Shown: in pieces, positions 24,356 to 49,445 of the stretch
Numbering within the stretch: the first letter of the stretch is position 1
Layout: the number at the start of each line of letters is the position of its first letter
Assembly (NCBI RefSeq): GCF_031769215.1
Contig: NW_026782277.1
Coordinates: 558,001-622,000 of the forward strand
DNA: 64,000 nucleotides
Direction of reading: 5' to 3'
Origin: Ylistrum balloti
Taxonomy: Eukaryota
Position numbers and translations under genes: made by a program
Notes under the pieces: model-generated
The model's input: only the letters and a program-made list of their open reading frames with translations
Database searches by the model: none
What the model was told of the DNA's origin: nothing

Positions 24356-29079
<4,724 letters not shown>

Positions 29080-29508
29080 CTATAGCATAACAAAGATATA
29101 ACAGAGGTAATAACTCTTTGTAGCATGGAAAACATAAATCATTGATAATGTGACATAGAACAAAAAGAGAAAAGGAAAAAAAACATTCGTAGAGTAGCTG
29201 AAAAAAACCCAGTCAGTATTGATTTAGCATAGCCAAGCTAATGAGTTTCCTGTAAAATCATCAATTTTTGTGGAGACTTATTTTCGTTTAAAATCTTATT
29301 CTACGAATGCTCATGAACGGAAATAATTTATTAATTCGTGTGCACCCACCTATCGAATATTCAACAGTGACGTTTGAAGAAATAAAACAACATGAAAATA
29401 GATATTTCTACAGTTAGTAAGTTTATAAAAAGTTACTTTCTAATGATCATGTAATAGCAAAATATACCTCAGTCAGTCAGGAAAGAACGTAAGGTGCAAT
29501 AATTCAAA

Positions 29509-30129
29509 TCTAGATAAGACATATCTAGAGAAGACATATTTATTGAAGGCATATCTAGAGAAGACATATCTAGAAATGACATATTATTGAAGACATATCT
29601 AGAGAAGACATATATGGAGAAGACATTTCTAGAGAAGCGTATCTAGAGAAGACATATCTAGAAATGACATATTTATTGAAGACATATCTAGAGAAGACAT
29701 ATATGGAGAAGACATTTCTAGAGAAGCGTATCTAGAGAAGACATATCTAGAAATGACATATTTATTGAAGACATGTATGGAGAAGACATTTTTAGAGAAG
29801 CGTATCTAGAGAAGACATATCTAAGTACGACATATCTAGAGAAGACATATCTAAGTACGACATATCTAGAGAAGACATATCTAAGTACGACATATCTAGA
29901 GAAGACATATCTAAGTACGACATATCTAGAGAAGACATATCTAGAGAAGACATATCTAGAGAGGACATATTTAGAGAAGACATATCTAGAGAGGACATAT
30001 TTAGAGAAGACATATCTAAGTACGACATATCTAGAGAAGACATATCTAGAGAAGACATATCTAAGTACGACATATCTAGAGAGGACATATTTAGAGAAGT
30101 AATACCTAAAGAGAACATATCTAGAGAAA
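29509..30129. repeat. 15-bp minisatellite (GAGAAGACATATCTA)n, about 41 units, in predicted intron 1 of copy C
   Basis: Directly visible, with variant units forming ~89-bp and 30-bp higher-order blocks. Confidence 0.95.
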
Positions 30130-30777
30130 TATTATCAATGATCCTCAGTGGAGACAATATTTGACCACATCAGGAAATTATTGCGAAAATTGATCATCCT
30201 TTGCCACCGTTATGTTCTAAGTAAACTATGGTCAGTTGAACTAGTTCCCTTGATTCGATAAGTCGATATGACAGCCATATCAGTTCATTTTTATGTCGTA
30301 ATAAGTAATTTTGAAATATATGGATGTCAAAAAGGGGAAAATACGTTTGTCATGTTCAGTAATGCGTTTTCGGGCTGCATTTATATCCCTGATGAACATA
30401 TATCAAGTAAATTTTCGCTAATCTTTATATAGGTTCGAGCACATATCGAGCATACACTTTACGTTATCTGACTGATTACAGAGCCACATAATATTGACCT
30501 TCGGGTCAATGTATCTCTCGGCGGATAAAAAAGTACAATGTCGTTACAACGTATAGTATAACCTTTGTATGCAATATGATCACAACTAACAGTCAACACG
30601 TGATCGATTTAATAATGTTATGTTGAAAGTTTAAATTTATATTCATTTACAACCAAATAAAAAAAAACACTTTTACTTCGAGTCAATATAATCATAATTC
30701 ATAATGTAAACTTGAATTCAATGAAACTAGGGCGAAATATGGATAAAGAAAGATTTAAGTGGAGACTCCTAAAAAAG

Positions 30778-30950
30778 TACAAGGCAAAATAAGACCAGAT
30801 GCTCTGAAAGAGTAAGCATCTTATGTTTCATCGAAGGCACCCGCCATGTAAATCTTTGTCAATCCGGGAAGTATGGTCACGTTCTCATATGAGAACAAGG
30901 TATACAAGACCGGAACCAACTAGTAAATTAGCGGGCATCAAACACGTCCA
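30778..30950 (+). repeat. Dispersed SINE-like repeat copy
   Basis: AAGTACAAGGCAAAATAAGACCAGATGCTCTGAAAGAGTAAGCATC...CATATGAGAACAAGG...GCATCAAACACGTCC. One of the most complete copies. Confidence 0.6.
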
Positions 30951-31890
30951 TTTTAATCTCGATTATGAAACATAACATTCTTTGAATGAGATCACTATGA
31001 CTTCCGTAGACCGTAATAATTTTTTCATCAACCTGTAGCTTTCGTGTTACGGGTTTGTCCGTAAGTCTATGATTTCCTGAACGAAAATCGTTATAATGGA
31101 ACAGACACTTTAATAACGAACCAACTGCGATTTGAAACCATCATATGTTATGGAAGACACAAGAATTCTGCTTTCAAGAAATGGAATATTCACAATAGGG
31201 AAGTTGAAAGATGTATAGTTTAATACATATCATTTATCCACTTGATATCGAATTGTATATTTAGATCGAATGCGATATGAAATATGCGATAAATGAAATA
31301 GTCTTCCTTGTAATCAATCCCTAGATATTGATAATTTTTACGGAATTACACTTCCAAGATGGCGACAATGACTAAATCGATCTGAACGAAATTTGATGCA
31401 TTGAATAAATCCACTAATGAAATGCATTTGAAATAAAGAAATGCGGAGACTAGAACAGCTAACATGTAATAAAAAATGAATGGTTTCCCCAAAGGTACTC
31501 TAGATACACGAGGTATCTTAATGCTTCATTAACAACAATGCGGTTTATAAAGACCAGTAAGTATAAACAGTGTGACGTCGTAAAGGAGCAGGAAAGTGAA
31601 ATATGGTCTTGTAATAGAGGTTTAACTATGTCTCTTTACAATAGCGAGAAAATATCACCGAGGTTGACAACGCATCAAATAGATCGATGTTACATTCACC
31701 AAAATCGTAATTTCGCAAAGCCGAAAAAGTAAACCAAGAATTTAAAGTCAGAAGAAGTACTGTTAAATGTACGTTACCAAAATTCACTATACATTATACA
31801 TTTCAATATGTGCATAAGTGTAAAATTCACGATCTATACATGAGAACAACGATAAAAAAAATCAGTGATATTAATCAGTACAAAATCTAC

Positions 31891-31960
31891 CTTCGTGTAA
31901 TCTTCAAGTCAGGTTCAGGTCCAGAGTGAAGTGCCGTGACTACAGAGTGCAATTTATATG
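31891..31960 (-). promoter_or_regulatory. Predicted non-coding exon 1 and TATA box of copy C
   Basis: Donor GAAG|GTAGAT at 31891/31890 and TATAAAT (minus) at 31958-31952. No CACGTG is present at the position seen in A, B and D. Confidence 0.45.
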
Positions 31961-34900
31961 CATCCATATCATTTAGTGGATACACTGTGTGGGGGTTGTT
32001 CAACACGCCATTTGCTTTTGCGAGTACGCAGTCAGGTGGAAATTACAATAATGTAACAAAATTACCTAAGAAACCAAAGTATTCATGCCAGGTTTGAATA
32101 AATTCATCAACTTGAGTAGTTGTAAGGTTCAGAAGAAAAAAAAACAATGTTGGAAATTATTGACTTAGATCGTGAGTTAAGTTTTTTTCTGATTTTCTGA
32201 TCAATTGTGATCATTAGTAACATCCTATGCTTCAAACGTAAGGCCTTTGGCATCAGGGACAAGTCCTAGAAGGTCGAAACAGCGGTATGTCTCAGCTTGA
32301 GATTTCTGTAAGATTGGAATTTTTAAAGGTATTTGTAAATGTTTGAGTCTTTTGTGCAGTCATTGTTTGAGAACAATATGACCTTTTGATGATGGTATAC
32401 TGTCCAAAATAGTACTTCAATATTTAAAACCAAATATGAAAAGGTCATCTCCACAAAGGGATTCAATTAATAATTTTGAAAATTGTTTAGTATTTTTTTT
32501 CTTGTGTGAATATCTGAGTTTTGTTTTCGATTATAGGACCATCCAAAGACATTTCTATAGTGAATCATTTTGTAATGTTATCGCAACATAACAAAAATTT
32601 TGTGTCATGATTTATTTAACAAAATGCCAGGGAATGCCTTAGAAATAAATGCAAATTATATCAAAGACTGTATGCAAAATTAAATAGAAAAAATAATGAA
32701 TACCAAAATTTTCTTCGAATGATTGCACTTATTCAATTCATACGTCAATTATCAGTTAGTGCATTGTTCATGGTGTGACATGTCATCTGTTTAAACACAT
32801 GATTGACTCGGTCCTGTGACACTTCACGGGATCTCTTCCTGTTATATCTTGTGATTTGTATCATGTTGGGATCAATTGATATGCAGATATCATTATCACA
32901 AATCAACCACAAATGTTTACAATGTGCGCTCCGATATAGATAATATCACGACGGATTGAGATATTACTTATCATTATAATCATAATACTGCAAGTCACCC
33001 GGCCAAGCCAACAATCAAATGTTGTTAAGTAATTTATGTATCAATTATGATACTGAGTATCGTTGTTTACTATTGAAAAAAACGTGTTTACTAACCAGCT
33101 AGCCTGATACACACTTTATACTTTCTAGTATGAATAATATGGCGTTGAATTATTGATGTATGTTGTAACAAATTTTCCTATCTGAGCTTGAAAAGTTTTC
33201 CTACATCACATTTTTAACTTTAGCAAAATCACAACTTCATAAAAACACTTATTATAAATAAATCGGCGATTGCCTTATATGAAGCAGAAGACCTTTACTT
33301 TGTTTTAATAATTAACATGGCAGGAACATTTAGAGTCATCTATGACTGGTTAAAAAAAGTAAAAATGTGACGTAAAATAATAAAACAAACTTTCTCCCAA
33401 TCCAGCTGGCTTCACAGTTTTAATGTATAGGGTGTATGTTTCTATATATATATATATGTTCATATGTTTGTTAAATTTAGAGACACACAAATCGTCTAAC
33501 TCTGAGAGATCAAAGTTATTAGATAAAAAAAACATAATTAATTTGCTTCTTTTAGATATTAGCTTTTACATTGGAGGCTCACTTAAACTTAAACACAGTT
33601 CTTATTAACAACAAGAAAACATAACAACATCATTTCACCCATAATTTTTGAAGCTAGGTAAATGTATGAATAAACTACAGATTCGTGCAGAGACCACTTC
33701 AAATGTACAACTTGAATAAGAACAGGTGTTCGGCAAAGGTAAGCATCTTCTGCTTCACCGACGACACCCACTGATGTAGTTACTACAGTAGCAATACCAG
33801 CTCGTTCCTGTCACTTAACACTTAAAGTTATGTTGGGATATTTTTCCTGCTGTTGAGATATTATATAAATTCTACCGATGTCTTAATGACAAATAATTGT
33901 AATTATTTTGTTTGAAAATATAATCTCTCAAAAGGGACCCTGGTAAAGTATTTTACACATGTCACAAAGTATCTGCAAATGGATTCTGATAATTTATTTT
34001 TAACATATTTGCGTCAAATGATACTACCAACCTTATCTTAACATTATAAGGATGTAATTTATTAAGTCTAATTTACCTCTTTATCATAGTATGATATCAT
34101 CATATATTAAATTTGATTTTTAAATTACATAAAAAAACCTTAACTATCAGTTTCTATCATCATTACAACTGTTCCATTTGATATCATTACTGTTAATATT
34201 TATCGATTTCCGTGATTATTTAATGTTTCTGGAGAACCTAGCTAAAACTAGGCTACAATCAAATGTCCGTGAATTGACATAAACATTGTTGTTCACATAA
34301 AAACATTTGGGTCATGTTTTCTTTTCCAATAAAATAAATTTAATTTTGAATTAAAATAATACATGGAAGAAACACCCTTGGTTCTGCAAGGGAATCAAAC
34401 ATATCTACCACCTACGATCATGTAGTGGCATGAAACAGTCCACATACTTTGGTTTTTCCGAAAACAAAAGATAAATACTAATCTAGCCTAAATTGACAAG
34501 AGAGTGCCAGATTGAGTTGTCTTTATGACAGTCAGAGAGATACAGCGGACATTTGATTCAATAAAAAGTTAGAGACAGAGGGAGCAGTGGGGTAATAACT
34601 GTACCGGACGACATTTTTACAGTTTCAATCATAGACTTTCCCTCTAGTATATAAATTGGTGTGAAATGAGATAGTGTGTATATGACAAATCGAATTCCCG
34701 TGTGTTTATCATAGATAAAAGGCATATAAATTATTTCCTGTAGTTTGTCTAAGATGCAATATTATGTGGATAACCGTATGTTAAGGAGTCCACTTGTGGT
34801 CACCTTCCTGATATGATAACACTTATTACTAGAAAGAAAACCCCACATGAAGCCTTGCCTTGTTTTTGGTCTTTCTAATAAGAATTTAGTTTATCTTAAT

Positions 34901-36763
34901 CACACCCACCAAAAGATGAAGTCTTCATATTCTGAAGCATTGTACACATCTATTATTAGCTATGATCTGATATGTAGGGGGATATAGTGTTTTATGTTGG
35001 CGATTGTTATATCCTGAAGTGATGGCTCAAATTAATGTAGATAATGCCGACACTAGACTTATCTATTTAATCGTATGATTGCTAAACGGGCATGCTGTCA
35101 ATGATGCTTTTTTATCTTTTCTTTTTTTCTCTTTTTCACAAATGCCGAAACAAAATTATAAAAAAAAACAAATAAAAGCAAAATACAAAACAACCAACCC
35201 CAAAAAGAAGGAAGAAAAACGAAAAAAAAAAAAACAAAAAAACAACAAAAAAAGACAAATGAAAAAAAAAATAATAGAAAAAAATCAATATCTCATTTTC
35301 TGATGCCAAGGACTTCATGTTTTATTTCAATATCTTTACTTTTGGCATTTTCCTTCAGTCAACAGGCAGTCCCTCAAAAATTATAAACATAATCACCTAA
35401 TGGGCGACCTGCGAGGTTTATGGTCGTCTGATTGAAATAAACTATACATGTTGTTATTAGTGTCATGTTCGTGCAGTGGTTCAGAAATATCTCTTATTAA
35501 ACCCTCATTATCCTGAAAGCATGTTTCTGTACAATTTGTTGTCAACATATGGTGTTAGTACAATTTCAAAGCTTATCATCTGTAAATAGATTGAATATAA
35601 TCACAGTAATTTGTATAAGCAATTGTACCATACCTCAAACAGAAAGGCGTAAGACTTCAATACGACAGTATAGCTCTGATAAAATCGAATAGATGATTCT
35701 GTTTATCGAAACCTAAACATCACTATCCTTATACAAAGCATGGATGATCTTACATAAGATTAGATGCATATGAAATATATGAAATATGTCTTCAATTCAT
35801 TTTTATTTCATAGAACCTCCATAATCTTGTATAAGATGGAACTAATGCAAAGGTATCTTTATCATATACAGCAGATATTTTTGTAAACATTAGAAAAAAG
35901 TATTCGAATGATGAAAAATCTAATTAAGAGATATGCTCACTGTGTATTTGTGTTTTGTGATGACAATATTCAAATGATGCAATGAAGCTATGACGTCGCA
36001 ATGGAAACAAACGGGTCTTCATCAGATGACAGCTATGCTAAGTGTGTTAACACGTGTGTAATATTACCGAAACTTACATAATGTATGCTATTACACTAAA
36101 TATAGGATCGTTAAGAGATCATCGATTTATCGTTGTCTTCTCTAAAACATCACAAATGCCTCCAACAGAGTAGTTGGTACATCTGTAGTTGTTTAGAAGA
36201 TTATAAAAAGAGACTAACGTGAATAGCATCTATCAATACAAATGTATAATTAGATACAGAACAATCAAACAATAAAGCTGCACCATTGAGCTGTTGCAAA
36301 GTTAAAAGACTCATCAGTCATGCTAAGGGCCTATGTTTTGGGAATAAGAATTGAACTAACGAGAGTTATCGTTATTGTCTTGATAAAAGTTGGAGTAACG
36401 TTTCTATAACACCTTACAATTCTTATCGCACGTATTAAAGACTTAAACGTAACAAATGATATTTTAAGTAATTAAACTATCAGATAATTTCATTATCATT
36501 TCATAATGTCAAGATTGAATACAAAATTGTAAAAAATTACAATGGTTACAGCAAATCTTACTGTTTTTGTTCTCCATAAACTACATTGGCTAATAATTGA
36601 CTATGTAATTGGTTTGACATTCCGGAAATATGAGTTCCTCCGGACGTTGATTAGGCATAATGATGTCGTACCACGATAATTTGTGTAATTCACTACATTT
36701 TAAAACGGCATACACATGCATGTCCCACTGTCATCTTTAGTGCTGTACCCAGCAGGCATCATC

Positions 36764-37687
36764 ATGGGTCTCTCCGCATACTGTGTAGTGACGTCCTTAA
36801 CTGTCTTTGTATTAAGAGGTAAGTCTTGTCATCATGACTCGAGTGATTATATATCATACACTGTCGTATTTGCAGCACTGAAAAATAATTTTTCGTCGGG
36901 CTGAATTTCCATGGCTTTTTTTTCAAAATATTTATTCCATGGACATTTGATTTAGTGGATAAATAAAAATATAAACAAATCTACTGAAGTAATATTTAAC
37001 AGATCCTCAACGAATGAATTTATACATTAAAAATATCAACGAAAGTAAAACAACAAGGACATGTAAATTCAATTGATTCTATATTCAAGGGTATATTCCC
37101 ATTATCACGATTTAGTGAAAGAACTCGTCAACAGACGGAAAACCTCGTAAAACTGGGGTTCAAAAGATGCAAGATGATGAGAATTATTCGGAAGTTTTTT
37201 GGTCGTCAAAGTGATGTTATTGAGAGAAATTGTATTTCTCTGTGCGGTGTGGAGGTAGACGTGATTCATGCTCGTTAGTTTGCCAGTTGGATATATTGTT
37301 ATACCATGTTCTTTTTTGGGAACGTGACATTACTTACTTTGATTAACCAAGACTCACATGGCGGGTGTCGTCCATGAAGCAGAAGACGCTACTCTTCCAG
37401 AACACCATGTCTTTTTACTTGTACTTTTTTCAGGAGCTTCCGAGTAAACATCATTGTATATCTTGTCCTAGGGTTTTTAATCTAGGTTTGGATTTTTGTT
37501 ATATTGACATTTTGGTATTTTTTTAGATGTTTCATACACTACACAATTTAATCGTGTTTCGTTTATGGGGATTCATTAACTTATACTGTTAAGTTATCCA
37601 TTAAAATACTATCATAAAACAACATAAGATTCTTCATTTAATTACAGAAATGAAGATAGGTCGTGATATCAGTATGCTTTGGCCTAG

Positions 37688-37721
<34 letters not shown>

Positions 37722-40700
37722 ATGTAATTGATAGATCAAAACAATCCTTATGAATATAATATATACGGAACTGAACTGTATCTAATGCATAATTAGATGC
37801 CAAATGTCAAAAGTCATTTAAGTATACTAATCTACGGCTACTTTTTACATATGAGAGCTATGATAATTGTGAGGCATTAAGAGTTCATACCCTTTTGAAC
37901 TCTTAATTCTTTTGCAGTTTAGTTTTTTGTCCGGTATTTTGTTTGTTAACGTTTCAACTTTGGATCCAGAGTCCATTTCGTTTATTACATCAAAGATGAA
38001 AATAAAAAAATACCAACATGTCGACGTAATTATGATTCAAGGTCAAATTTGATAATACTGCGGCGAAAAATGAATAAAACAAACAGACACAGACACACTC
38101 CTGAAAAAGTACAAGGAAAATAAGACAAAGTGTTCCGGAAGAGTAAACGACAAGACACTGTAAAATTGCAAGGCGTCTGTATGATGCTGTCATAAATACA
38201 AACAACTTTCTAATTGCAATCAAATAGTTGTTGGTGGATATCAGGTTTTGATATTTATGAGTTATTAATTCTATATCAGCAATAAAATCAAAACTAACTG
38301 ATCTGAAGCAAATTTCGTGAGGTGGTAAAATTGAGAAAACAAGCTGCATCCCTTTCATAGCTATCTGTTGTCTTTGTTTGATGTATATAGATTTGCAATA
38401 TGACGGTAACATGCGACATTTGATCAACCTTTTTCCAATGGTTTTACAAAATATCCAATAATCTTTGTCGAATGGATGTTCTTGAATAGCACTTAGTATC
38501 ATTATGAACATACATGCAAGTCTCTCTTTAATAGAAAATAAAAACCCGTAGTTGATCGTAAAGCATAAATCAGTTCTAAAGACATTTCTGTGTGTTTGTG
38601 GGAGATAGGGTTGGGGATAGGGGAGAGGATTATCAGCTGTTTTGTTTATTTTATGTGTACTTGTAATCTACGAATTGTCCGCGAACTGTTATAATTGTAT
38701 GGTCATACTGATTGTGCTATATTTTAATCACGAAAGGAATTGATCATAGATTAGAGATCTATTGAAAATTCAACCACATATGAGGCCAACGAAACTATCT
38801 AATTTTACAGTAATCTGTAGTACAAACTAAAACATCTAATTTTACAGGAAATTTGTAGTACAAACGAAAATATCTAACTTTACAATTTTCAGGACAAACA
38901 AAAATTTCTTTATTTACAGTAATCTGTAGTACAAACTAAAACATCTAATTTTACAGGAAATGTTGTGCAACCATGTTCTGAACTGGGATGTTTCGTCTTT
39001 GTTTGGTTTCAGGTAGACATTAGACAAATGAAAATAGATCTGCTTTACTTGAATTCATATATGTCGCTTCGTTTCTGTTGACACTATCCTTCTATCCGTT
39101 TCGGTGGACACCAGCTATAATGCATGTATGACACTGGCTATTACGAGTTCTTACACACTCTAACAAACTATTACTTTCCATTTAGAGTAAGCAGTCCCTC
39201 TCCCTATAATATCATATTGATATTTCGTTGTAGTTGAAGGCGCGAGATGGATGAACGTTGATGAGGCAGTTAGCAGATCCATCAGACACCTGGAGTTGAT
39301 GAATGAGAAACGATCCATACTGGATACAACTCCAGGGGAAGTTATCAACATAGAACAGGAAACTGACCTCATAGAAAGTGACGCGGTCAACACCATAGAA
39401 GGGTCAAAGGTCATGCGATATTTTGAAACATTCCACGGGATTCCAGTTTACGATTCCATTGCTTCCATAGAGGTCGACAGTGAACACGGTACGTACACCG
39501 GACAAGCATCCGGGCAACTGCTTCAAGACATTCACAATGACGTCACATCCGTAATACCAACTCTGAAGAAAGCTGAGGCTCTGGTACTTGCAAAAATGTA
39601 CTTTGGTGGCGACAGCAACGAGTACAGTAACGAAAAAGTGGAACTAGTGATATATCCTGTAGGACATGTGGCAGCATTAGCTTACAAAATATCATTTATC
39701 GCATTCAGGAATGACAATATAGCTAGACGTCGTTTCTTTCTCAATGCAAATACTGGAAAACTCTTGAAAGAAGTGAATTTACTTCCGTCATTTCAGGCAA
39801 AAACTACAGGAGGTAATACCAAGATTGGTAAATTAGAATACGGTAAATCTATGCCCTTTCTGAAAGTAAGAAAAACAGGAACAAATTGTACGTTAGCCAA
39901 CGATAAAGTGAAAGTCTATGATCTTCACCATGGTAAAAGATTGAATAAGGGGGACCGTCCATTTTCCTTTGACTGTAATGAAGGAATTTCAGACGAGGGC
40001 AATGGGGCATTTTCTCCACTCAGCGATGCTTATTTCTACGCGAACAGAGTTTTCAAAATGTACGAGGAACTAGTGCATGCGCCTGCAATTAAAGAACAGC
40101 CAATTCAAATATGGGTTCACTACGGTGAAAATGCTATCGTAGCCCAGTTTTCTGGTCCAATGCTCCTGTTTGGGGATGGCCGGAAGGATATTTTCTACCC
40201 GATGGTTTCTGCAGACGTCCTAGGTCACGAAATGACACATGGATTCGTAGAAGAACATTCAGATCTTGAGTACAGTGGTCAGTCTGGAGCAGTAGATGAG
40301 TCGTTTGCGGACGTTGCCGGAGAGGCGGCCGAAGAATTTATCTTTGGAAGTCACGACTTCAAATCTGGTGAAGACATCTCCATGGGTTACACAGTTCGGG
40401 ATATGTGTAATCCAGAAACAGACAGTAGGTCCATTGACCATGTTAATGACTTCAATGACGATTTAGATGTCCACTACACTAGTGGTATTTTCAACAAAGC
40501 GGCGTGCTTGCTGGTAACATCGGACGAATTCGATATATTTAAAGTGTTTCAGATCTTTGCGCATGCCAATCGTTTTTATTGGCATCCAACATCGAATTTC
40601 AGCGGGGCCGCTTGTGGTATTGCAAAAGCCGCTTATGACCTAGGACATAATACCGACGAGATAGCAGCTGCGTTTGAAAACGTTGGTGTTGAAATCTGCT

Positions 40701-41032
40701 CAATGGAGAAATATACAAGAACAATTCACACAGATATCACTATAAAAAGTCTCCAGGCAAAGGGTGACGAAAAAATAGTATTTAAATTCAATATCAGGTC
40801 CGGAAAAAGCTTCTTGATCTATACTATGAATGGGGATGGAGATATCGATGTAACTATAGATTCGAAACGCAAATTAAGAGGTGCAGCCCCGCTGTATTCA
40901 TCGGATTCAAAGGGAAACCTAGAAATGATCAACGTTGATTTAAAACTGATTCGAAAAGGCTACATCACTTTAAAACCAAAGAAGAAAGGAATGTTTTCAG
41001 GCGTGAAATTTGACTTACGTATCCAACACTGA
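36764..41032 (+). CDS. Secreted M4-family (thermolysin/vibriolysin/pseudolysin-like) zinc metalloprotease, 617 aa, two coding exons
   Basis: join(36764..36818,39234..41032) = 1854 nt. Exon 1 is MGLSAYCVVTSLTVFVLR+G with a GTAAGT donor. Its phase 1 matches the acceptor tttcgttgtag at 39233, giving ...LR-VEG-ARWMN. Motifs: FTP-like RYFETFHGIPV, PepSY-like ELVIYP..ALAYKISF, mature start TTGGNTKIGKLEYG, HEMTH (40226-40240), QSGAVDESFAD (third Zn ligand), DVHYTSG (catalytic His) and a C-terminal PPC-like GDGDID segment. Confidence 0.9.
37300..37412 (-). repeat. Dispersed SINE-like repeat copy in the M4 gene intron
   Basis: The reverse complement reads GGTGTTCTGGAAGAGTAGCGTCTTCTGCTTCATGGACGACACCCGCCATGT, the family core. 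Confidence 0.6.
38797..38960. repeat. 37-38 bp minisatellite (ATCTAATTTTACAGTAATCTGTAGTACAAACTAAAAC), ~4.5 units, in the M4 intron
   Basis: Unit starts at 38797, 38834, 38872, ~38906 and 38943. Confidence 0.8.
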
Positions 41033-41269
41033 AAAATACTGTACATATAATTGCTATTGGTTAACTTTTATATTTTGAAGATCTCTCCGGGAAATACAAT
41101 TGCTATTTACCTAATATGCTACGTCCTGTTTTAAGTACCTTGTACCAATGTGTTTGTGTGTGTGTATGTTTTTTTTTTTTTTTTTTTTTGAGTGATTTGT
41201 ATTTTCGCTATATTCGCGAATATTAGAATAATATTTTTACGTATATTAATAGCTTCATATTTTTGCACT

Positions 41270-41412
41270 TCTGACAGTTGAATGCGAACGACCCTGAAAA
41301 GGTATAGGATCACCTGCCCGACCCTTTGATTTTCCCCGGGTACTACGGTCTTCACCCACAGAAAGACCCCACGAGCGTTTCAATCCGTGCCAACAATAGT
41401 GCTTTATATAAG
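41270..41412 (+). mobile_element. Degenerate SINE fragment (V/Meta-type core resemblance)
   Basis: TTTCCCCGGGTACTACGGTCTTCACCCACA resembles the conserved GGGTACTCCGGTTTCCTCCCACA core of metazoan SINE superfamilies. This is recalled similarity, not a search result. Confidence 0.35.
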
Positions 41413-43750
41413 TAGAAAAAATGGTCTCGCAATTAATGTAAAATAGCGAAAGTTTACTCTTTAAATAGATTAATACATATGTGAAAAAAGGAACCAAACA
41501 GAAATCACACAGTTTGCGGGATCGGCACATTCATCAACTAATACAATCAGATATACCTTCACTTGGCGGATATTAGTAATTGAAGACTTAACCCTCAAGT
41601 ACGTTTCACATCTATAGCCTTATAAGCGATAAACATTTCGAAGCGGCCAATGTAGTAATTTTATGTTCATTTTTTAATATTATTGACAACTTATATTCAA
41701 CACAGACATAATGCAGGGGAGATAAATCTCGTCTGAAATCCTACATCGTAATATCAACGAAGGGTTTTATCGGAGATAAATAATACCACATACGATTAGT
41801 GTTTATATTGTCGACAGTCCGCTAGCCATTTGTGTTTTCATACAATGATGCACTTTTGTAATGTTCGCATTTCAATAACTAAATCATGTTTACAGTGACT
41901 TGTGAACTCTAAATAATACTGTTTTTAAAATATTGTTTGTGTATGGTAATTTGTAGTGATACAAATATCAATCGGCGACAAGACCTCTTTTTTCGAAGTG
42001 TATCAATATATCTCTGATGTCATGATTTCAAAGGATTTGCCTTTCATGTCAGTTTCCCCGGAAATAAACTAGTTTTAAACATATAACGAATACTTAACAC
42101 AATCAACTCATCGAATTTCAACTTAATTACTTAAGCCAACTCAACCCAAAAAGTAACTACCGAATTCTTTCACATTTACTTAGCTCCCTGATTTTCTTAT
42201 ATCTTTCGCACAGACGACGTCCTTTGCATCTGACATTTCTCCTAATTCTATATCTCTTCACTGTCCCTTTAAGCTGCCTTTATAATTATGTTATTGTATA
42301 ATACATTTATTAATATTTCTGTCTGTGGAAGTTACAAAATATATGTCACCATGCGTAGATTAATGATATATTTAATAAGAAACAGAATAATATAATGATA
42401 TATGTCTGTAGCCCTGAGCTGTTTCCAGGTCCAGTTCCATTCTATTCATCTGGACAGGCGTGTTCCTTATAGACAATGGAATAAAGTTTATATCAAATAC
42501 ACGCTCGAACTAATGATGTAAAAGAAAAATGGATGCAGTAATAATATTGCTCAGAATAAAATCTATGTCGAAAAATCTTTTTCCCGGGTGCGTGTGTCTT
42601 TATATGACACGTGATGGAAAATTGAATAAAGTTTGTATTATATAAACGGCCGTACTCTTATAATGTAAAAAGACATAAAGTGGAAGCAGCAATGACCCAG
42701 AAAAAATCTATGTCAGCAAAACGTTTACCGTGCCCATGTTTGCCACGTGATAGAAAATGCATTTAATATAAAGATAAAAAGTGAAAGCAGTTTTTAAATC
42801 CACCGGATATTATGAAAAAATGTGTTTATTACGTGAAAACGTGAATAAACCAGGCTGACAGGGATATGATTTGTAACTCTCGTTCACGTGGAGACAACGA
42901 CTTTTAATTTCATACGTATAGCCTTGTGTGTATGAGACAGTTTTTATTTAAATTTAACTGTAAACCAAGCATAAGTTACATTGTTTTGAAATCAAACAGA
43001 GGATATCGTAAATCTGATATTAACTTGGCATCTATTGCAAGGCGCTATGCATTTACATTACATTGCTATTCATAAAAAAACAACATGACGAAAGAGAATG
43101 ACGATTAATTGTTAATCGTTGTACAATGCAGCGATAATGGGACCAGGTGTTCAAGAATAGTTAGAGTCTTCTTTTTCATCGACGACACATGACATGTAAA
43201 TCATGATTAGTCCAAGTCATCAAATTTGCGTTCGTCGCAAATGAGAACAAGGCATAAGTATCAATTCACTGAATGTATTGTGGAAAGACAATTTGTTAAA
43301 ATCTCCAGGATCTCAGGATTGAAAGAGATGTGTCCGCAACAAAACGTCAGGATTTCTGAATAGCCCGGTGTATCCATTTCGGAATCACTCTCAAAAGGAG
43401 ACATGCGAGGTGACACATTTTTCCTCGTTCAATTACCAAGGGCGTTTTTTAAACCAAGTCTGAAAGAAAGGTCTCCACATCAGCATGTTGGTGCTCGTAC
43501 TGATCGTTCTCTCAGAGCTGTATTTTAAACCTTTAGGTATTGACAGTGAACAAGTTGAACGTCTATCGTCAAATGCTTGATTTATCTCAATGCAGGTGTA
43601 GTTGAATCGCTAATAAACAGTCTTCTAAATAACAACAACAAAAATACAACTGTTTTTCTTAATAACTTTAGCTATTTTGTTGTTTGTCTTTTTATGATTC
43701 AATTGAGCGTTGATTTTATTATCTTAAAAAAAAGATTATTAGGTTAAAAC

Positions 43751-43860
43751 TCACGTGGTAGATATTTTAATATCACGTGACTCACACACCCTGTTATCGA
43801 CTATAAAGATAGTTGGAAGTCTAAGGCCCGGTATCGCAGGCAGGATCTCCATTGGACAAG
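43751..43860 (+). promoter_or_regulatory. Core promoter and non-coding exon 1 of copy D
   Basis: CACGTG at 43752-43757 and 43774-43779 (ATCACGTGAC), TATAAA at 43802-43807, donor AAG|GTAAGA at 43860/43861. Confidence 0.7.
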
Positions 43861-45188
43861 GTAAGAGACCTGAACACTTTACACATAACAACTTTGTATA
43901 GTAGTAGTATTAGAGCATTATTTAACAAAATCATCAAATCATAAAGAATAATTTAAGAGCATCTTTCCAAAAAAATAAATAAACTTAAAGGTGTTAGCCA
44001 TTTCAAGTTTTATCATATCTACAATGATATTCATCAGAGAAAAAATGTATTTCATTCTATCTAAGCTTAGACCAAAAACAGTTGTTTGTTGAAAGGGATA
44101 ATTATGGAAGAAACCACTTCAGGGATTTTATTAGATGGAACAATAAACGTATTTCAACATCTATTAAATTTAATGATGAATTTCATACCACACAAGAAAG
44201 CAATTCAAGTGAGTTACTTTTTTTCATGGTAAAATTTCATCTATCAGTAGACAGTAAAACGGAATGTATTCCTTAGCTCTTTAATATGAACTAAATATTA
44301 CTAAACCTCTGTGCCAGAGATTATTTATCAGTTTTAAATTTCAAAAACATCTAAGAAAATAAAATGCATTCAGATTTTACAAAATATCATAGAAGAGATT
44401 TTATGTGTTTAAACAAAGTAAGCGGATATAATATTAAATAGCAATTAGTGTTTACTTTGCTAATATCACGTTTATCCTCAAAAAACACAGAATAAACAAA
44501 AACAACAACAAGACCTGTTTCGTCGTAGTTGCTAATGTAACCGCAAATCTAATACGATCTCTGGATGTGTACCAAGTTGACAACGGAGACATTTCAAAAG
44601 TTAGGTTTGACCCAGTTCACAATACCAAACATGTTGTGCAAACCCCGCAAATGATAACAGGAGATAGGTCAAACAAGTTCAATAGCATTTCTCTCGTGAC
44701 CTCTTTATCTGTGACGAGAAGATAACGTTTGACAAAGTATCTTGACCTTGTTTCAGTAATATTCCATAGGTTAAACAGCATATTTTCCCCTGGGGGATTA
44801 ACTAGAACATGGCAACGGTCTGAAAATTAATTGATCTTATAGTTGCAACTCCTTCCGTCTTTGAAAAAAGGCGTTGTCATAAGCTTTCTTTTTATGTTTT
44901 TGTCATTATACATCAGCGATATTTTAAGATAATAAATGTGGACATCAGTTGGAAGAATTGGAAGAGATAGCATTTTAATACAAATTGCTGTGACCATCGT
45001 GATTATCATACATAGACAGAGAAAAAATACAATTGAAAAAAAAAAAATATGTTCTTCTTCTTCTTTATATATAGATATATAAGGATGTATTTTTTGGTGT
45101 ATACTTAATGTTTTTAACCACTGTGAATCTCTTCATAAACATTTGATTTGGTTTTGTATTAAGCTATTTAATTTCGTTCCCCGAACAG

Positions 45189-49445
<4,257 letters not shown>

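What the first reader, a model, noticed from the sequence alone, without database searches (positions are those of the whole stretch)
36764..39250. Signal peptide of the M4 gene comes from a separate 55-nt exon across a 2,415-bp spliceosomal intron
Seen: the 593-aa ORF called by the track starts at MNVDEAV and has no signal peptide. Directly upstream is an acceptor (tttcgttgtag, 39233) followed by in-frame codons xVEGARW. A mini-exon at 36764-36818 (Kozak-like atcATGg, donor GTAAGT) is in the matching phase and gives MGLSAYCVVTSLTVFVLRVEG|AR, a hydrophobic signal with a small-residue cleavage site. The remaining 1.8 kb has no intron, unlike every neighbouring gene. Inference: a 5' intron or recruited host signal exon on an otherwise intronless body is what a transferred prokaryotic gene adapting to eukaryotic expression would look like. 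It also argues against assembly contamination.
Basis: partly seen in the sequence, partly recalled or inferred. Interest (0 to 1): 0.72.

Follow-up and report, generated by a model that had tools for sequence, protein, structure and literature searches.

The report
Scallop M4 protease: split signal peptide

Summary
Exon 1 (36764-36818, 55 nt), a phase-1 GTAAGT...TAG intron (36819-39233, 2,415 nt) and one long exon (39234-41032) reproduce the public RefSeq protein XP_060074769.1, "elastase-like" of the scallop Ylistrum balloti (617 aa).

Three other scallops have the same model. Sequence conservation stops at the donor and resumes at the acceptor. A promoter-like block lies just upstream of the ATG.

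The gene is not a recent arrival. Eight of eight mollusc M4 genes mapped have the same plan: a tiny first coding exon, a phase-1 intron inside the signal peptide, and a single-exon body. They cover bivalves, a gastropod and an octopus, in two old paralogue groups.

All mollusc-type sequences form one group against the bacterial ones (support 100). The protein keeps the full bacterial pseudolysin/vibriolysin layout: propeptide, M4 catalytic domains and a PPC-like tail.

The best reading is one ancient bacterium-to-mollusc transfer. The signal-peptide intron was fixed before the paralogues split, and I saw no later intron in the bodies I mapped.

I saw no transcript data, the trees are unrooted, and I found no paper on this. 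Moderate interest.

The parts
36644..36723 (+). Conserved upstream block, probably core promoter and 5' UTR, at -120 to -41 of the start codon
   Evidence: 75% and 61% identical to Pecten and Argopecten, with 47 of 84 columns identical in all three. Intron flanks are only 25-35% identical. The promoter role is inferred.
36764..36818 (+). Coding exon 1: Met1-Arg18 plus the first base of Val19, the main part of the signal peptide
   Evidence: Matches residues 1-18 of XP_060074769.1 exactly. It is the only strong-donor hydrophobic candidate in the 12 kb upstream. Orthologues have a stop 3-8 codons upstream of this ATG.
36819..39233 (+). Phase-1 GT-AG spliceosomal intron, 2,415 nt
   Evidence: GTAAGT donor and ttgtAG acceptor. 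Alignment identity falls to background inside it. It holds a 37-nt x4.5 tandem repeat at 38792-38956.
39234..41032 (+). Exon 2: the rest of the coding sequence to the stop codon, with no further intron
   Evidence: Continuous ORF. Matches residues 19-617 of P0001 exactly.
39234..39250 (+). Codons upstream of the ORF-caller's ATG: (V)EGARW, with the predicted signal-peptidase site between Gly21 and Ala22
   Evidence: 76% and 71% nucleotide identity to Pecten and Argopecten, at least as high as the coding sequence that follows. The GARW / A[KR]W motif is kept in scallops, octopods and metagenomic eukaryote contigs. The cleavage site comes from a heuristic only.
39242..39790 (+). Propeptide (FTP/PepSY type)
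   Evidence: The LasB pro-elastase chain aligns from ORF residue 50 (E 1e-79) and the MCP-02 propeptide chain to ORF residues 18-174 (E 6.5e-7). PepSY (E 0.001) and FTP (E 0.05) are below the Pfam cut-offs. The boundaries are approximate.
39791..40693 (+). M4 catalytic domains (Peptidase_M4 and Peptidase_M4_C)
   Evidence: Pfam E 2.5e-22 and 2.4e-29, both above the gathering scores. Mature pseudolysin aligns to ORF residues 184-481.
40226..40240 (+). HEMTH zinc-binding motif
   Evidence: H350, E351 and H354 (P0001 numbering), E374 (third zinc ligand) and H432 are invariant in a 20-sequence mollusc and bacterial alignment.
40733..41026 (+). C-terminal PPC-like domain (bacterial pre-peptidase C-terminal type)
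   Evidence: Profile-profile comparison of mollusc tails with bacterial PPC domains: probability 96.4%, E 1.2e-9, 97 columns, including the G-x-G-D-x-D-x-Y/T-V motif. The single-sequence Pfam hit is only faint (E 0.2).

Best explanation
This is the Ylistrum balloti gene for a secreted zinc metalloprotease zymogen of family M4, pseudolysin/vibriolysin type. It has two coding exons.

Inferred mode of action:
- Transcription starts just upstream of 36764, at a promoter block conserved among scallops.
- Exon 1 supplies the start codon and the hydrophobic core of the signal peptide.
- A phase-1 GT-AG intron of 2,415 nt is spliced out.
- Exon 2 supplies the last signal-peptide residues (V-E-G|A-R), the inhibitory and chaperone propeptide, the catalytic domains and a PPC-like tail.
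- The signal peptide sends the zymogen into the ER. The propeptide is then removed and the enzyme acts outside the cell, perhaps in digestion given the flanking cathepsin-L genes. That last point is a guess.

Evolution: a bacterial M4 gene entered an early mollusc ancestor once. It gained its only intron inside the signal-peptide region, either by capturing a host 5' exon and promoter or by intron insertion. It then duplicated and has been inherited vertically since. In scallops of this paralogue group the exon boundaries moved by a multiple of three bases, which kept phase 1.

Shown: the gene model, its conservation, the domain content and the grouping of mollusc sequences. Inferred: splicing in vivo, secretion, the direction and age of the transfer, and the function.
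For: Gene model
- Exact identity with XP_060074769.1 and its CDS span.
- Same-phase exon 1 in Pecten and Argopecten, and the same 24-residue N-terminal addition in Mizuhopecten XP_021347169.1.
- Conservation stops at the donor and resumes at the acceptor. The upstream block is 75%/61% identical.
- Unique candidate exon within 12 kb.
- In orthologues a stop lies just upstream of the ATG.

Ancient shared structure
- 8 of 8 mollusc genes mapped have 9-20 codons plus 1 nt, then a phase-1 intron, then one exon: Ylistrum A and B, Pecten, Argopecten, Octopus, Tegillarca, Haliotis, Solemya.
- An unidentified eukaryote contig also has a phase-1 acceptor at the equivalent place.

Family
- Pfam M4 and M4_C and invariant catalytic residues.
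- PDB ranking: pseudolysin 1e-79 > MCP-02 > ProA >> thermolysin 1e-24. This is the same order as for a Collimonas enzyme.
- PPC-like tail.

Origin
- 14 and 31 mollusc-type sequences form one side of a branch against bacteria, SH-aLRT 100.
- Both paralogue clades contain bivalves and cephalopods.
- Every named animal hit is a mollusc.
- More than 579 bacterial loci were found, with at most 39% identity, mostly Gamma- and Betaproteobacteria.
- Host integration: cathepsin-L genes on both sides in three scallops. ORF GC is 42% against 34% for the window.
Against: - I saw no transcript data. RefSeq models are computational and I cannot see what supports them.
- The signal peptide and its cleavage site rest on a simple hydrophobicity and -3/-1 heuristic, not on SignalP or an experiment.
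- The trees are unrooted quick searches with flagged compositional heterogeneity. Nesting inside bacteria rests on score ranking, not on an outgroup-rooted tree.
- Only about a quarter of database proteins carry names, so absence from other animals is not proven.
- In scallops of this group the intron lies 7 codons before the ARWxN landmark, against 14-17 elsewhere. One ancestral intron therefore requires a boundary shift.
- A 5' non-coding exon further upstream cannot be excluded.
Confidence: 0.85

Rival explanations
1. There is no upstream exon. Translation starts at ATG 39251 and gives a 593-aa protein without a signal peptide, as the ORF track and the GenBank Mizuhopecten model OWF53457.1 have it.
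For: The 593-aa ORF is complete on its own. One deposited scallop model has this form.
Against: - The 17 nt upstream of that ATG are conserved as coding sequence (GARW) exactly down to the acceptor, and not beyond it.
- That Met is not kept in octopods or in the B-group genes.
- RefSeq models of four scallops include exon 1.
- An M4 zymogen with a propeptide is a secreted type of protein.
Confidence: 0.03
2. The signal-peptide introns of the different mollusc lineages or paralogues were gained independently, because this region is a hot spot for phase-1 introns. They are not inherited from one ancestral intron.
For: - A general excess of phase-1 introns near signal-peptide cleavage sites is known (PMC1626468).
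- The position relative to the ARWxN landmark differs: 7 codons in group-A scallops against 14-17 elsewhere.
Against: - 8 of 8 genes have exactly one intron, always phase 1, always inside the signal peptide, and none anywhere in about 1.8 kb of body.
- That many parallel gains with no gain elsewhere is unparsimonious.
- Shifts by multiples of three keep the phase and are expected in fast-evolving signal peptides.
Confidence: 0.1
3. M4 is an old eukaryotic or animal gene, inherited vertically and lost in other phyla. There was no transfer from bacteria.
For: - The tree is unrooted, so the mollusc group is simply the sister of all sampled bacterial sequences.
- No close donor exists; the best bacterial identity is 39%.
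Against: - No named non-mollusc animal appears among hits that score better than the bacterial ones.
- The protein keeps the whole bacterial multi-domain layout, including a PPC tail.
- It ranks with Gram-negative pseudolysins far above thermolysins, just as a proteobacterial enzyme does.
- The body has no intron in genomes whose other genes are rich in introns.
Confidence: 0.07
4. It is a recent transfer into scallops, or bacterial contamination of the assembly.
For: The body has no intron and the protein is bacterial in type.
Against: - Same locus and same neighbours in three scallop genomes.
- 73-76% identical orthologues.
- Host-like GC content.
- Mollusc-wide paralogue clades.
- At most 39% identity to any bacterium.
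Confidence: 0.01

Closest known systems
Pseudolysin (LasB) / vibriolysin (MCP-02) subfamily of peptidase family M4
   Same: Same domain order: signal peptide, FTP/PepSY propeptide, M4 catalytic domains, PPC tail. HEXXH, the Glu zinc ligand and the catalytic His are kept. Best PDB matches are pro-elastase at 1e-79 and MCP-02 at 2e-64.
   Different: Encoded in an animal nucleus behind a spliceosomal intron. Only 31-39% identical to any bacterial member. AT-rich codon usage. The signal peptide looks eukaryotic and lacks the basic n-region.
Bacterial genes domesticated in animals that gained introns and secretion signals, such as plant-parasitic nematode GHF5 cellulases (PMC2633302) and the alpha-amylase transferred to Basidiomycetes (PMC3584928). 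From my own knowledge, also the tick dae genes.
   Same: A prokaryotic enzyme gene integrated among host genes, with host-like composition, a eukaryotic promoter, secretion and at least one acquired intron.
   Different: Here exactly one intron was fixed, in the signal peptide, and the mapped bodies show no other across three mollusc classes. The amylase case shows rapid and massive intron gain.
The general excess of phase-1 introns at signal-peptide cleavage regions (Tordai & Patthy and Vibranovski et al., as reviewed in PMC1626468)
   Same: A phase-1 intron inside or next to the signal peptide. In scallops it lies 2-3 codons before the predicted cleavage site, with a G|G junction context.
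   Different: Because the gene looks bacterial in origin, this intron is most likely a datable gain rather than a relic. In most mollusc members it lies in the hydrophobic core, 10-13 codons before the cleavage site, not at it.
RefSeq models XP_060074769.1, XP_033725568.1, XP_069103018.1 and XP_021347169.1 ('elastase-like' or uncharacterized proteins of four scallops)
   Same: The other three share the 24-27 residue N-terminal addition.
   Different: They are unreviewed automatic annotations. They say nothing about origin or intron history.

Membership tests
Peptidase family M4 (thermolysin family), pseudolysin/vibriolysin branch | Peptidase_M4 and Peptidase_M4_C domains above the curated cut-offs | tested here: met
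   80.3 and 102.8 bits against cut-offs of 22.4 and 24.4
Peptidase family M4 (thermolysin family), pseudolysin/vibriolysin branch | HEXXH zinc motif, downstream Glu ligand and catalytic His | tested here: met
   H350, E351, H354, E374 and H432 (P0001 numbering) are invariant across 20 mollusc and bacterial sequences. HEMTH lies at window 40226-40240.
Peptidase family M4 (thermolysin family), pseudolysin/vibriolysin branch | N-terminal FTP/PepSY propeptide | tested here: met
   Pro-elastase aligns from ORF residue 50. The MCP-02 propeptide chain matches at E 6.5e-7. The Pfam PepSY and FTP hits are below threshold.
Peptidase family M4 (thermolysin family), pseudolysin/vibriolysin branch | Closer to pseudolysin/vibriolysin than to thermolysin/bacillolysin | tested here: met
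   272 against 90 bits for the window protein and 301 against 98 for paralogue P0126. A Collimonas enzyme shows the same ranking.
Peptidase family M4 (thermolysin family), pseudolysin/vibriolysin branch | Zinc-dependent endopeptidase activity | not testable with these tools
   Needs expression and an assay
Secretory (ER) signal peptide | Hydrophobic core followed by small residues at -3/-1 | tested here: met
   Best 10-residue window KD 2.5. A single -3/-1 site after residue 21, V-E-G|A. The same pattern is seen in 8 mollusc homologues. This is a heuristic, not SignalP.
Secretory (ER) signal peptide | Cleavage and secretion in vivo | not testable with these tools
   No experiment or proteomic data were available
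Spliceosomal GT-AG intron | Canonical donor and acceptor with matching phase that restores the reading frame | tested here: met
   G|GTAAGT ... ttgtAG|TT, phase 1. The join equals P0001.
Spliceosomal GT-AG intron | Conserved in orthologues, with conservation confined to the exons | tested here: met
Spliceosomal GT-AG intron | Junction seen in transcripts | not testable with these tools
   No RNA-seq was available for this species. Full-length contiguous ~2.3-2.5 kb Logan contigs of relatives (P0011, P0128) look like spliced transcripts, but I did not verify this.
Bacterium-to-animal horizontally transferred gene | Integrated among host genes, with synteny shared between species | tested here: met
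   Cathepsin-L genes on both sides in Ylistrum, Pecten and Argopecten
Bacterium-to-animal horizontally transferred gene | Restricted to one animal lineage, with the nearest outside relatives bacterial | tested here: inconclusive
   All named animal hits are molluscs and the next-best hits are bacteria. Most database proteins are unnamed, and only the top 120 of each search were listed.
Bacterium-to-animal horizontally transferred gene | Nested inside bacterial diversity in a rooted tree | tested here: inconclusive
   The mollusc sequences form one clan with support 100, but the trees are unrooted. Nesting is supported only by score ranking against thermolysins.

The most novel reading that the evidence does not exclude
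One bacterial pseudolysin-type gene entered the common ancestor of bivalves, gastropods and cephalopods, a split I take from general knowledge to be roughly half a billion years old. It fixed exactly one intron, phase 1, inside the signal peptide, before it duplicated. Since then it has fixed no further intron in either paralogue in any of three classes.

That would make the family a datable natural experiment on two questions. One is how phase-1 signal-peptide introns arise: 5' exon capture or insertion. The other is how low the intron-gain rate has been in molluscs.
Probability: 0.5. Interest if true: 0.55.

Novelty: new member of a known kind. Interest (0 to 1): 0.42.

Why it matters
For annotation, the finding shows that a bare ORF call (593 aa, no signal peptide, as in GenBank OWF53457.1) misses the true start of the gene. 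It also confirms that the RefSeq model is right.

For biology, it points to a mollusc-wide family of secreted proteases of a type otherwise known as bacterial virulence or nutrition enzymes. I found no paper that describes this family.

The gene looks bacterial in origin, so its single signal-peptide intron is probably a gain. This gives a clean case for the old debate on why phase-1 introns cluster at signal peptides. It also suggests very little intron gain in molluscs over deep time.

The function of the family (digestion, immunity or shell matrix turnover) is open and easy to test.

Tried and rejected
- Recruitment of exon 1 from the neighbouring cathepsin-L gene. Its first coding exon (window 45189 onward) encodes an unrelated signal peptide fused to the I29 domain. 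Rejected.
- The upstream in-frame ATG at 36716 as the true start. It is specific to Ylistrum, and orthologues have a stop 3-8 codons upstream of the shared ATG. Rejected as the conserved start.
- A second in-phase AG 6 nt downstream (39238-39239) as the acceptor. It is absent in Pecten and Argopecten. Unlikely.
- Other M4 copies in the window: none (tblastn).
- Other features near the gene: no Rfam family in 29000-45200 and only two overlapping ORFs of 90 aa or more, at 29773-30157, in 29000-36760. I did not scan those two or the 173-aa ORF inside the intron (37990-38511, minus strand) against Pfam.
- Literature: nine searches found no paper on mollusc M4 genes or their origin (one search was a malformed query). 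The octopus HGT list PMC6011040 does not mention a peptidase.
- Identity of the metagenomic eukaryote contigs (L006-L008): not resolved.
- A short in-frame intron in L007: only a weak GTTTGT donor fits. Left open.
- Mizuhopecten genomic locus: P0002 was not on record, so its intron was not mapped.
Searches used exon 2 (window:39251-41029) and exon 1 (window:36764-36817) by reference, plus the public protein P0001, which a tool returned and which equals the join.
- The large representative-protein search was not used, because that library has no names and so cannot show taxonomic absence.
- No structure prediction was run.
- The window has no N, and nothing in it looked human.
Full report
**What is there**

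The window is genomic DNA of the scallop Ylistrum balloti: GCA_031769215.1, contig JAUZWB010001256.1. The 593-aa ORF at 39251-41032 carries Peptidase_M4 and Peptidase_M4_C well above Pfam's cut-offs.

- The ATG is at 36764, in the context atcATGg.
- 18 codons plus one base run up to 36818.
- The donor is G|GTAAGT.
- The acceptor tttcgttgtAG ends at 39233, which gives a 2,415-nt phase-1 intron.
- The split codon is G+TT (Val), followed in frame by E-G-A-R-W and then the Met of the ORF call.
- An in-frame stop at 39218 and no ATG before 39251 mean these upstream codons can only be read through a spliced upstream exon.

**The model is already annotated**

The word-index protein search with exon 2 alone returned a 617-aa public protein that is 100% identical: P0001 = XP_060074769.1, "elastase-like [Ylistrum balloti]". 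Its CDS span in the record is 4,269 bp, which is 36764-41032. Mapping it back on the window gives residues 1-18 at 36764-36817 and residues 19-617 from 39233.

I did not build the joined sequence myself. I searched the exons by reference and used this tool-returned protein.

**More than chance, and conserved**

Among 168 phase-1 ATG..GT mini-exon candidates in the 12 kb upstream of the acceptor, only the 36818 donor has both a good donor score and a hydrophobic core.

Pecten maximus (XP_033725568.1) and Argopecten irradians (XP_069103018.1) have the same structure: 18-20 codons plus 1 nt, then G|GTAAG, then a phase-1 acceptor directly before V-(D/H)-G-A-R-W-M. Mizuhopecten RefSeq XP_021347169.1 has the same N-terminus. 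The GenBank model OWF53457.1 lacks it.

DNA alignments of the three loci give these identities to Pecten and Argopecten:

| Segment | Pecten | Argopecten |
|---|---|---|
| Exon 1 | 62% | 45% |
| First 100 nt of the intron | 33% | 25% |
| Last 150 nt of the intron (-150 to -21) | 31% | 35% |
| 17 nt between acceptor and ATG 39251 | 76% | 71% |

A block at -120 to -41 of the start codon (36644-36723) is the best conserved non-coding stretch, at 75% and 61%. I read it as promoter and 5' UTR; this is an inference.

The in-frame ATG at 36716 is specific to Ylistrum. Orthologues have a stop 3-8 codons upstream of the shared ATG.

**Signal peptide**

By a simple Kyte-Doolittle and -3/-1 heuristic, the N-terminus has a hydrophobic core (KD 2.5) and one small-residue site, V-E-G|A-R after residue 21. 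The seven other mollusc homologues I examined have comparable N-termini. SignalP was not available.

**The protein**

- The closest solved structures are Pseudomonas pro-elastase/LasB (E 1e-79, propeptide included), vibriolysin MCP-02 (2e-64) and Legionella ProA (5e-53).
- Thermolysin is far weaker (1e-24).
- The second Ylistrum paralogue and a Collimonas enzyme give the same ranking.
- HEXXH (HEMTH, 40226-40240), the Glu zinc ligand and the catalytic His are invariant across mollusc and bacterial members.
- The C-terminal ~100 residues are homologous to the bacterial PPC domain: hhalign probability 96.4%, E 1.2e-9.

So everything from the propeptide onward is the bacterial layout. Only exon 1 and the intron are additions of eukaryotic type.

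**Not a recent arrival**

A second search, seeded with the ark-clam homologue, shows M4 genes across molluscs:
- Bivalves: Solemya, Tegillarca, Pinctada, Pecten, a second Ylistrum gene, unionids and venerids.
- Gastropods: Haliotis, Pomacea, Littorina, Batillaria, Nucella.
- Cephalopods: three Octopus species and Argonauta.

No named non-mollusc animal appears ahead of the bacterial hits.

In maximum-likelihood trees, the 14 mollusc-type sequences and then 31 form one side of a branch against 53 and 25 bacterial sequences, with SH-aLRT 100. Inside the mollusc group there are two paralogue clades, and each contains bivalves and cephalopods. Clade B splits into a cephalopod group, a gastropod group and a bivalve group.

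A scan of one genome per bacterial species found more than 579 loci. The best are only 31-39% identical, mostly Lysobacterales, Burkholderiales, Alteromonadales and Vibrionales.

**The intron is shared**

I mapped public proteins onto their loci. All eight genes have 9-20 codons plus one base, then a GT donor, then a phase-1 intron, then one uninterrupted exon.

| Gene | Intron length |
|---|---|
| Ylistrum A (window) | 2.4 kb |
| Pecten A | 4.0 kb |
| Argopecten A | 15.5 kb, with two SCAN/zf-CCHC ORFs inside |
| Octopus sinensis A | 6.2 kb |
| Tegillarca B | 2.2 kb |
| Ylistrum B | 0.6 kb |
| Haliotis B | 12.1 kb |
| Solemya B | 2.7 kb |

An unidentified eukaryote contig from a metagenome (L006) has a phase-1 acceptor at the equivalent place.

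Measured to the conserved A-[RK]-[WR]-x-N landmark, the split codon lies 14-17 codons upstream in most genes but 7 in group-A scallops. A boundary shift by a multiple of three would explain this. The most economical reading is one intron fixed before the paralogues and the classes diverged, with no intron gained since in the mapped bodies.

**Interpretation and rivals**

- Host integration is further shown by cathepsin-L genes on both sides in three scallop genomes and by host-like composition.
- What does not stand is the flavour of a gene caught in the act of adapting. The arrangement appears to be as old as the major mollusc classes.
- Whether exon 1 was captured from the host or an intron was inserted into the original signal sequence cannot be decided here. 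The adjacent cathepsin-L signal exon is unrelated.
- Independent gains at a known phase-1 hot spot (PMC1626468) and vertical descent from an older eukaryotic gene remain minor possibilities. The trees are unrooted, and database naming is incomplete.

**Known or new**

The spliced model is public annotation. Genes of bacterial origin that acquire introns and secretion signals are a known kind (PMC2633302, PMC3584928). Nine literature searches found nothing on mollusc M4 genes or their origin. I therefore file this as a new member of a known kind, of moderate interest. Its value is as a datable case of a signal-peptide phase-1 intron gain followed by a long stasis.

**Limits**

- I saw no transcript evidence.
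- The signal peptide rests on a heuristic.
- The trees are quick searches with compositional warnings.
- Gene-structure look-ups were capped, so eight genes stand for the family.
- The large unnamed protein library was not searched, because it cannot show which taxa lack the gene.

Noticed in passing
window 36644-36723: The non-coding block 41-120 nt upstream of the start codon is better conserved among three scallops (75% and 61%) than exon 1 itself. It contains TGACATTCCGG, GTTGATTAGGCATAATGATG, TAATTTGTGT and an A/T-rich TAAAA element. It is probably the promoter.
   Followed up: partly
window 38792-38956 and 37689-37725: The intron holds a 37-nt tandem repeat (4.5 copies), and each unit carries an acceptor-like TTTTACAG. 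It also holds a (TA)n(TG)n microsatellite.
   Followed up: no
window 39238-39239 and 36716-36718: Two Ylistrum-only features. A second AG in the same phase lies 6 nt after the acceptor; if used it would drop Val-Glu. An in-frame upstream ATG would add 16 residues. Neither is present in Pecten or Argopecten.
   Followed up: partly
L003:10061-25525 (Argopecten irradians): The orthologous intron has grown to about 15.5 kb. It contains two called ORFs of 661 and 506 aa with weak SCAN and faint zf-CCHC hits, probably retroelement-derived.
   Followed up: no
window up to about 29079 (minus strand) and 45189-49445 (plus strand); L002, L003: Cathepsin-L-like genes (Inhibitor_I29 + Peptidase_C1) flank the M4 gene on both sides, and this order is kept in Pecten and Argopecten. 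A sulfotransferase gene follows downstream in Ylistrum. This may be a small cluster of secreted protease genes.
   Followed up: partly
L009:3001-5532 (Ylistrum balloti contig JAUZWB010001275.1): A second M4 paralogue in the same genome (P0126, 650 aa) has a 9-codon exon 1 and a phase-1 intron of about 0.58 kb. It belongs to the other mollusc clade.
   Followed up: yes
L007:2037-2160 (unidentified eukaryote contig from a metagenome): The 650-aa ORF call seems to read through a possible 81-nt in-frame phase-1 intron (GTTTGT...TTTCAG) inside its signal peptide. The donor is weak, so this is uncertain.
   Followed up: partly
P0002 versus P0236 (Mizuhopecten yessoensis): GenBank OWF53457.1 ('Virulence metalloprotease', 593 aa) lacks the signal-peptide exon that RefSeq XP_021347169.1 (617 aa) includes. 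This is an annotation inconsistency for the same gene.
   Followed up: yes
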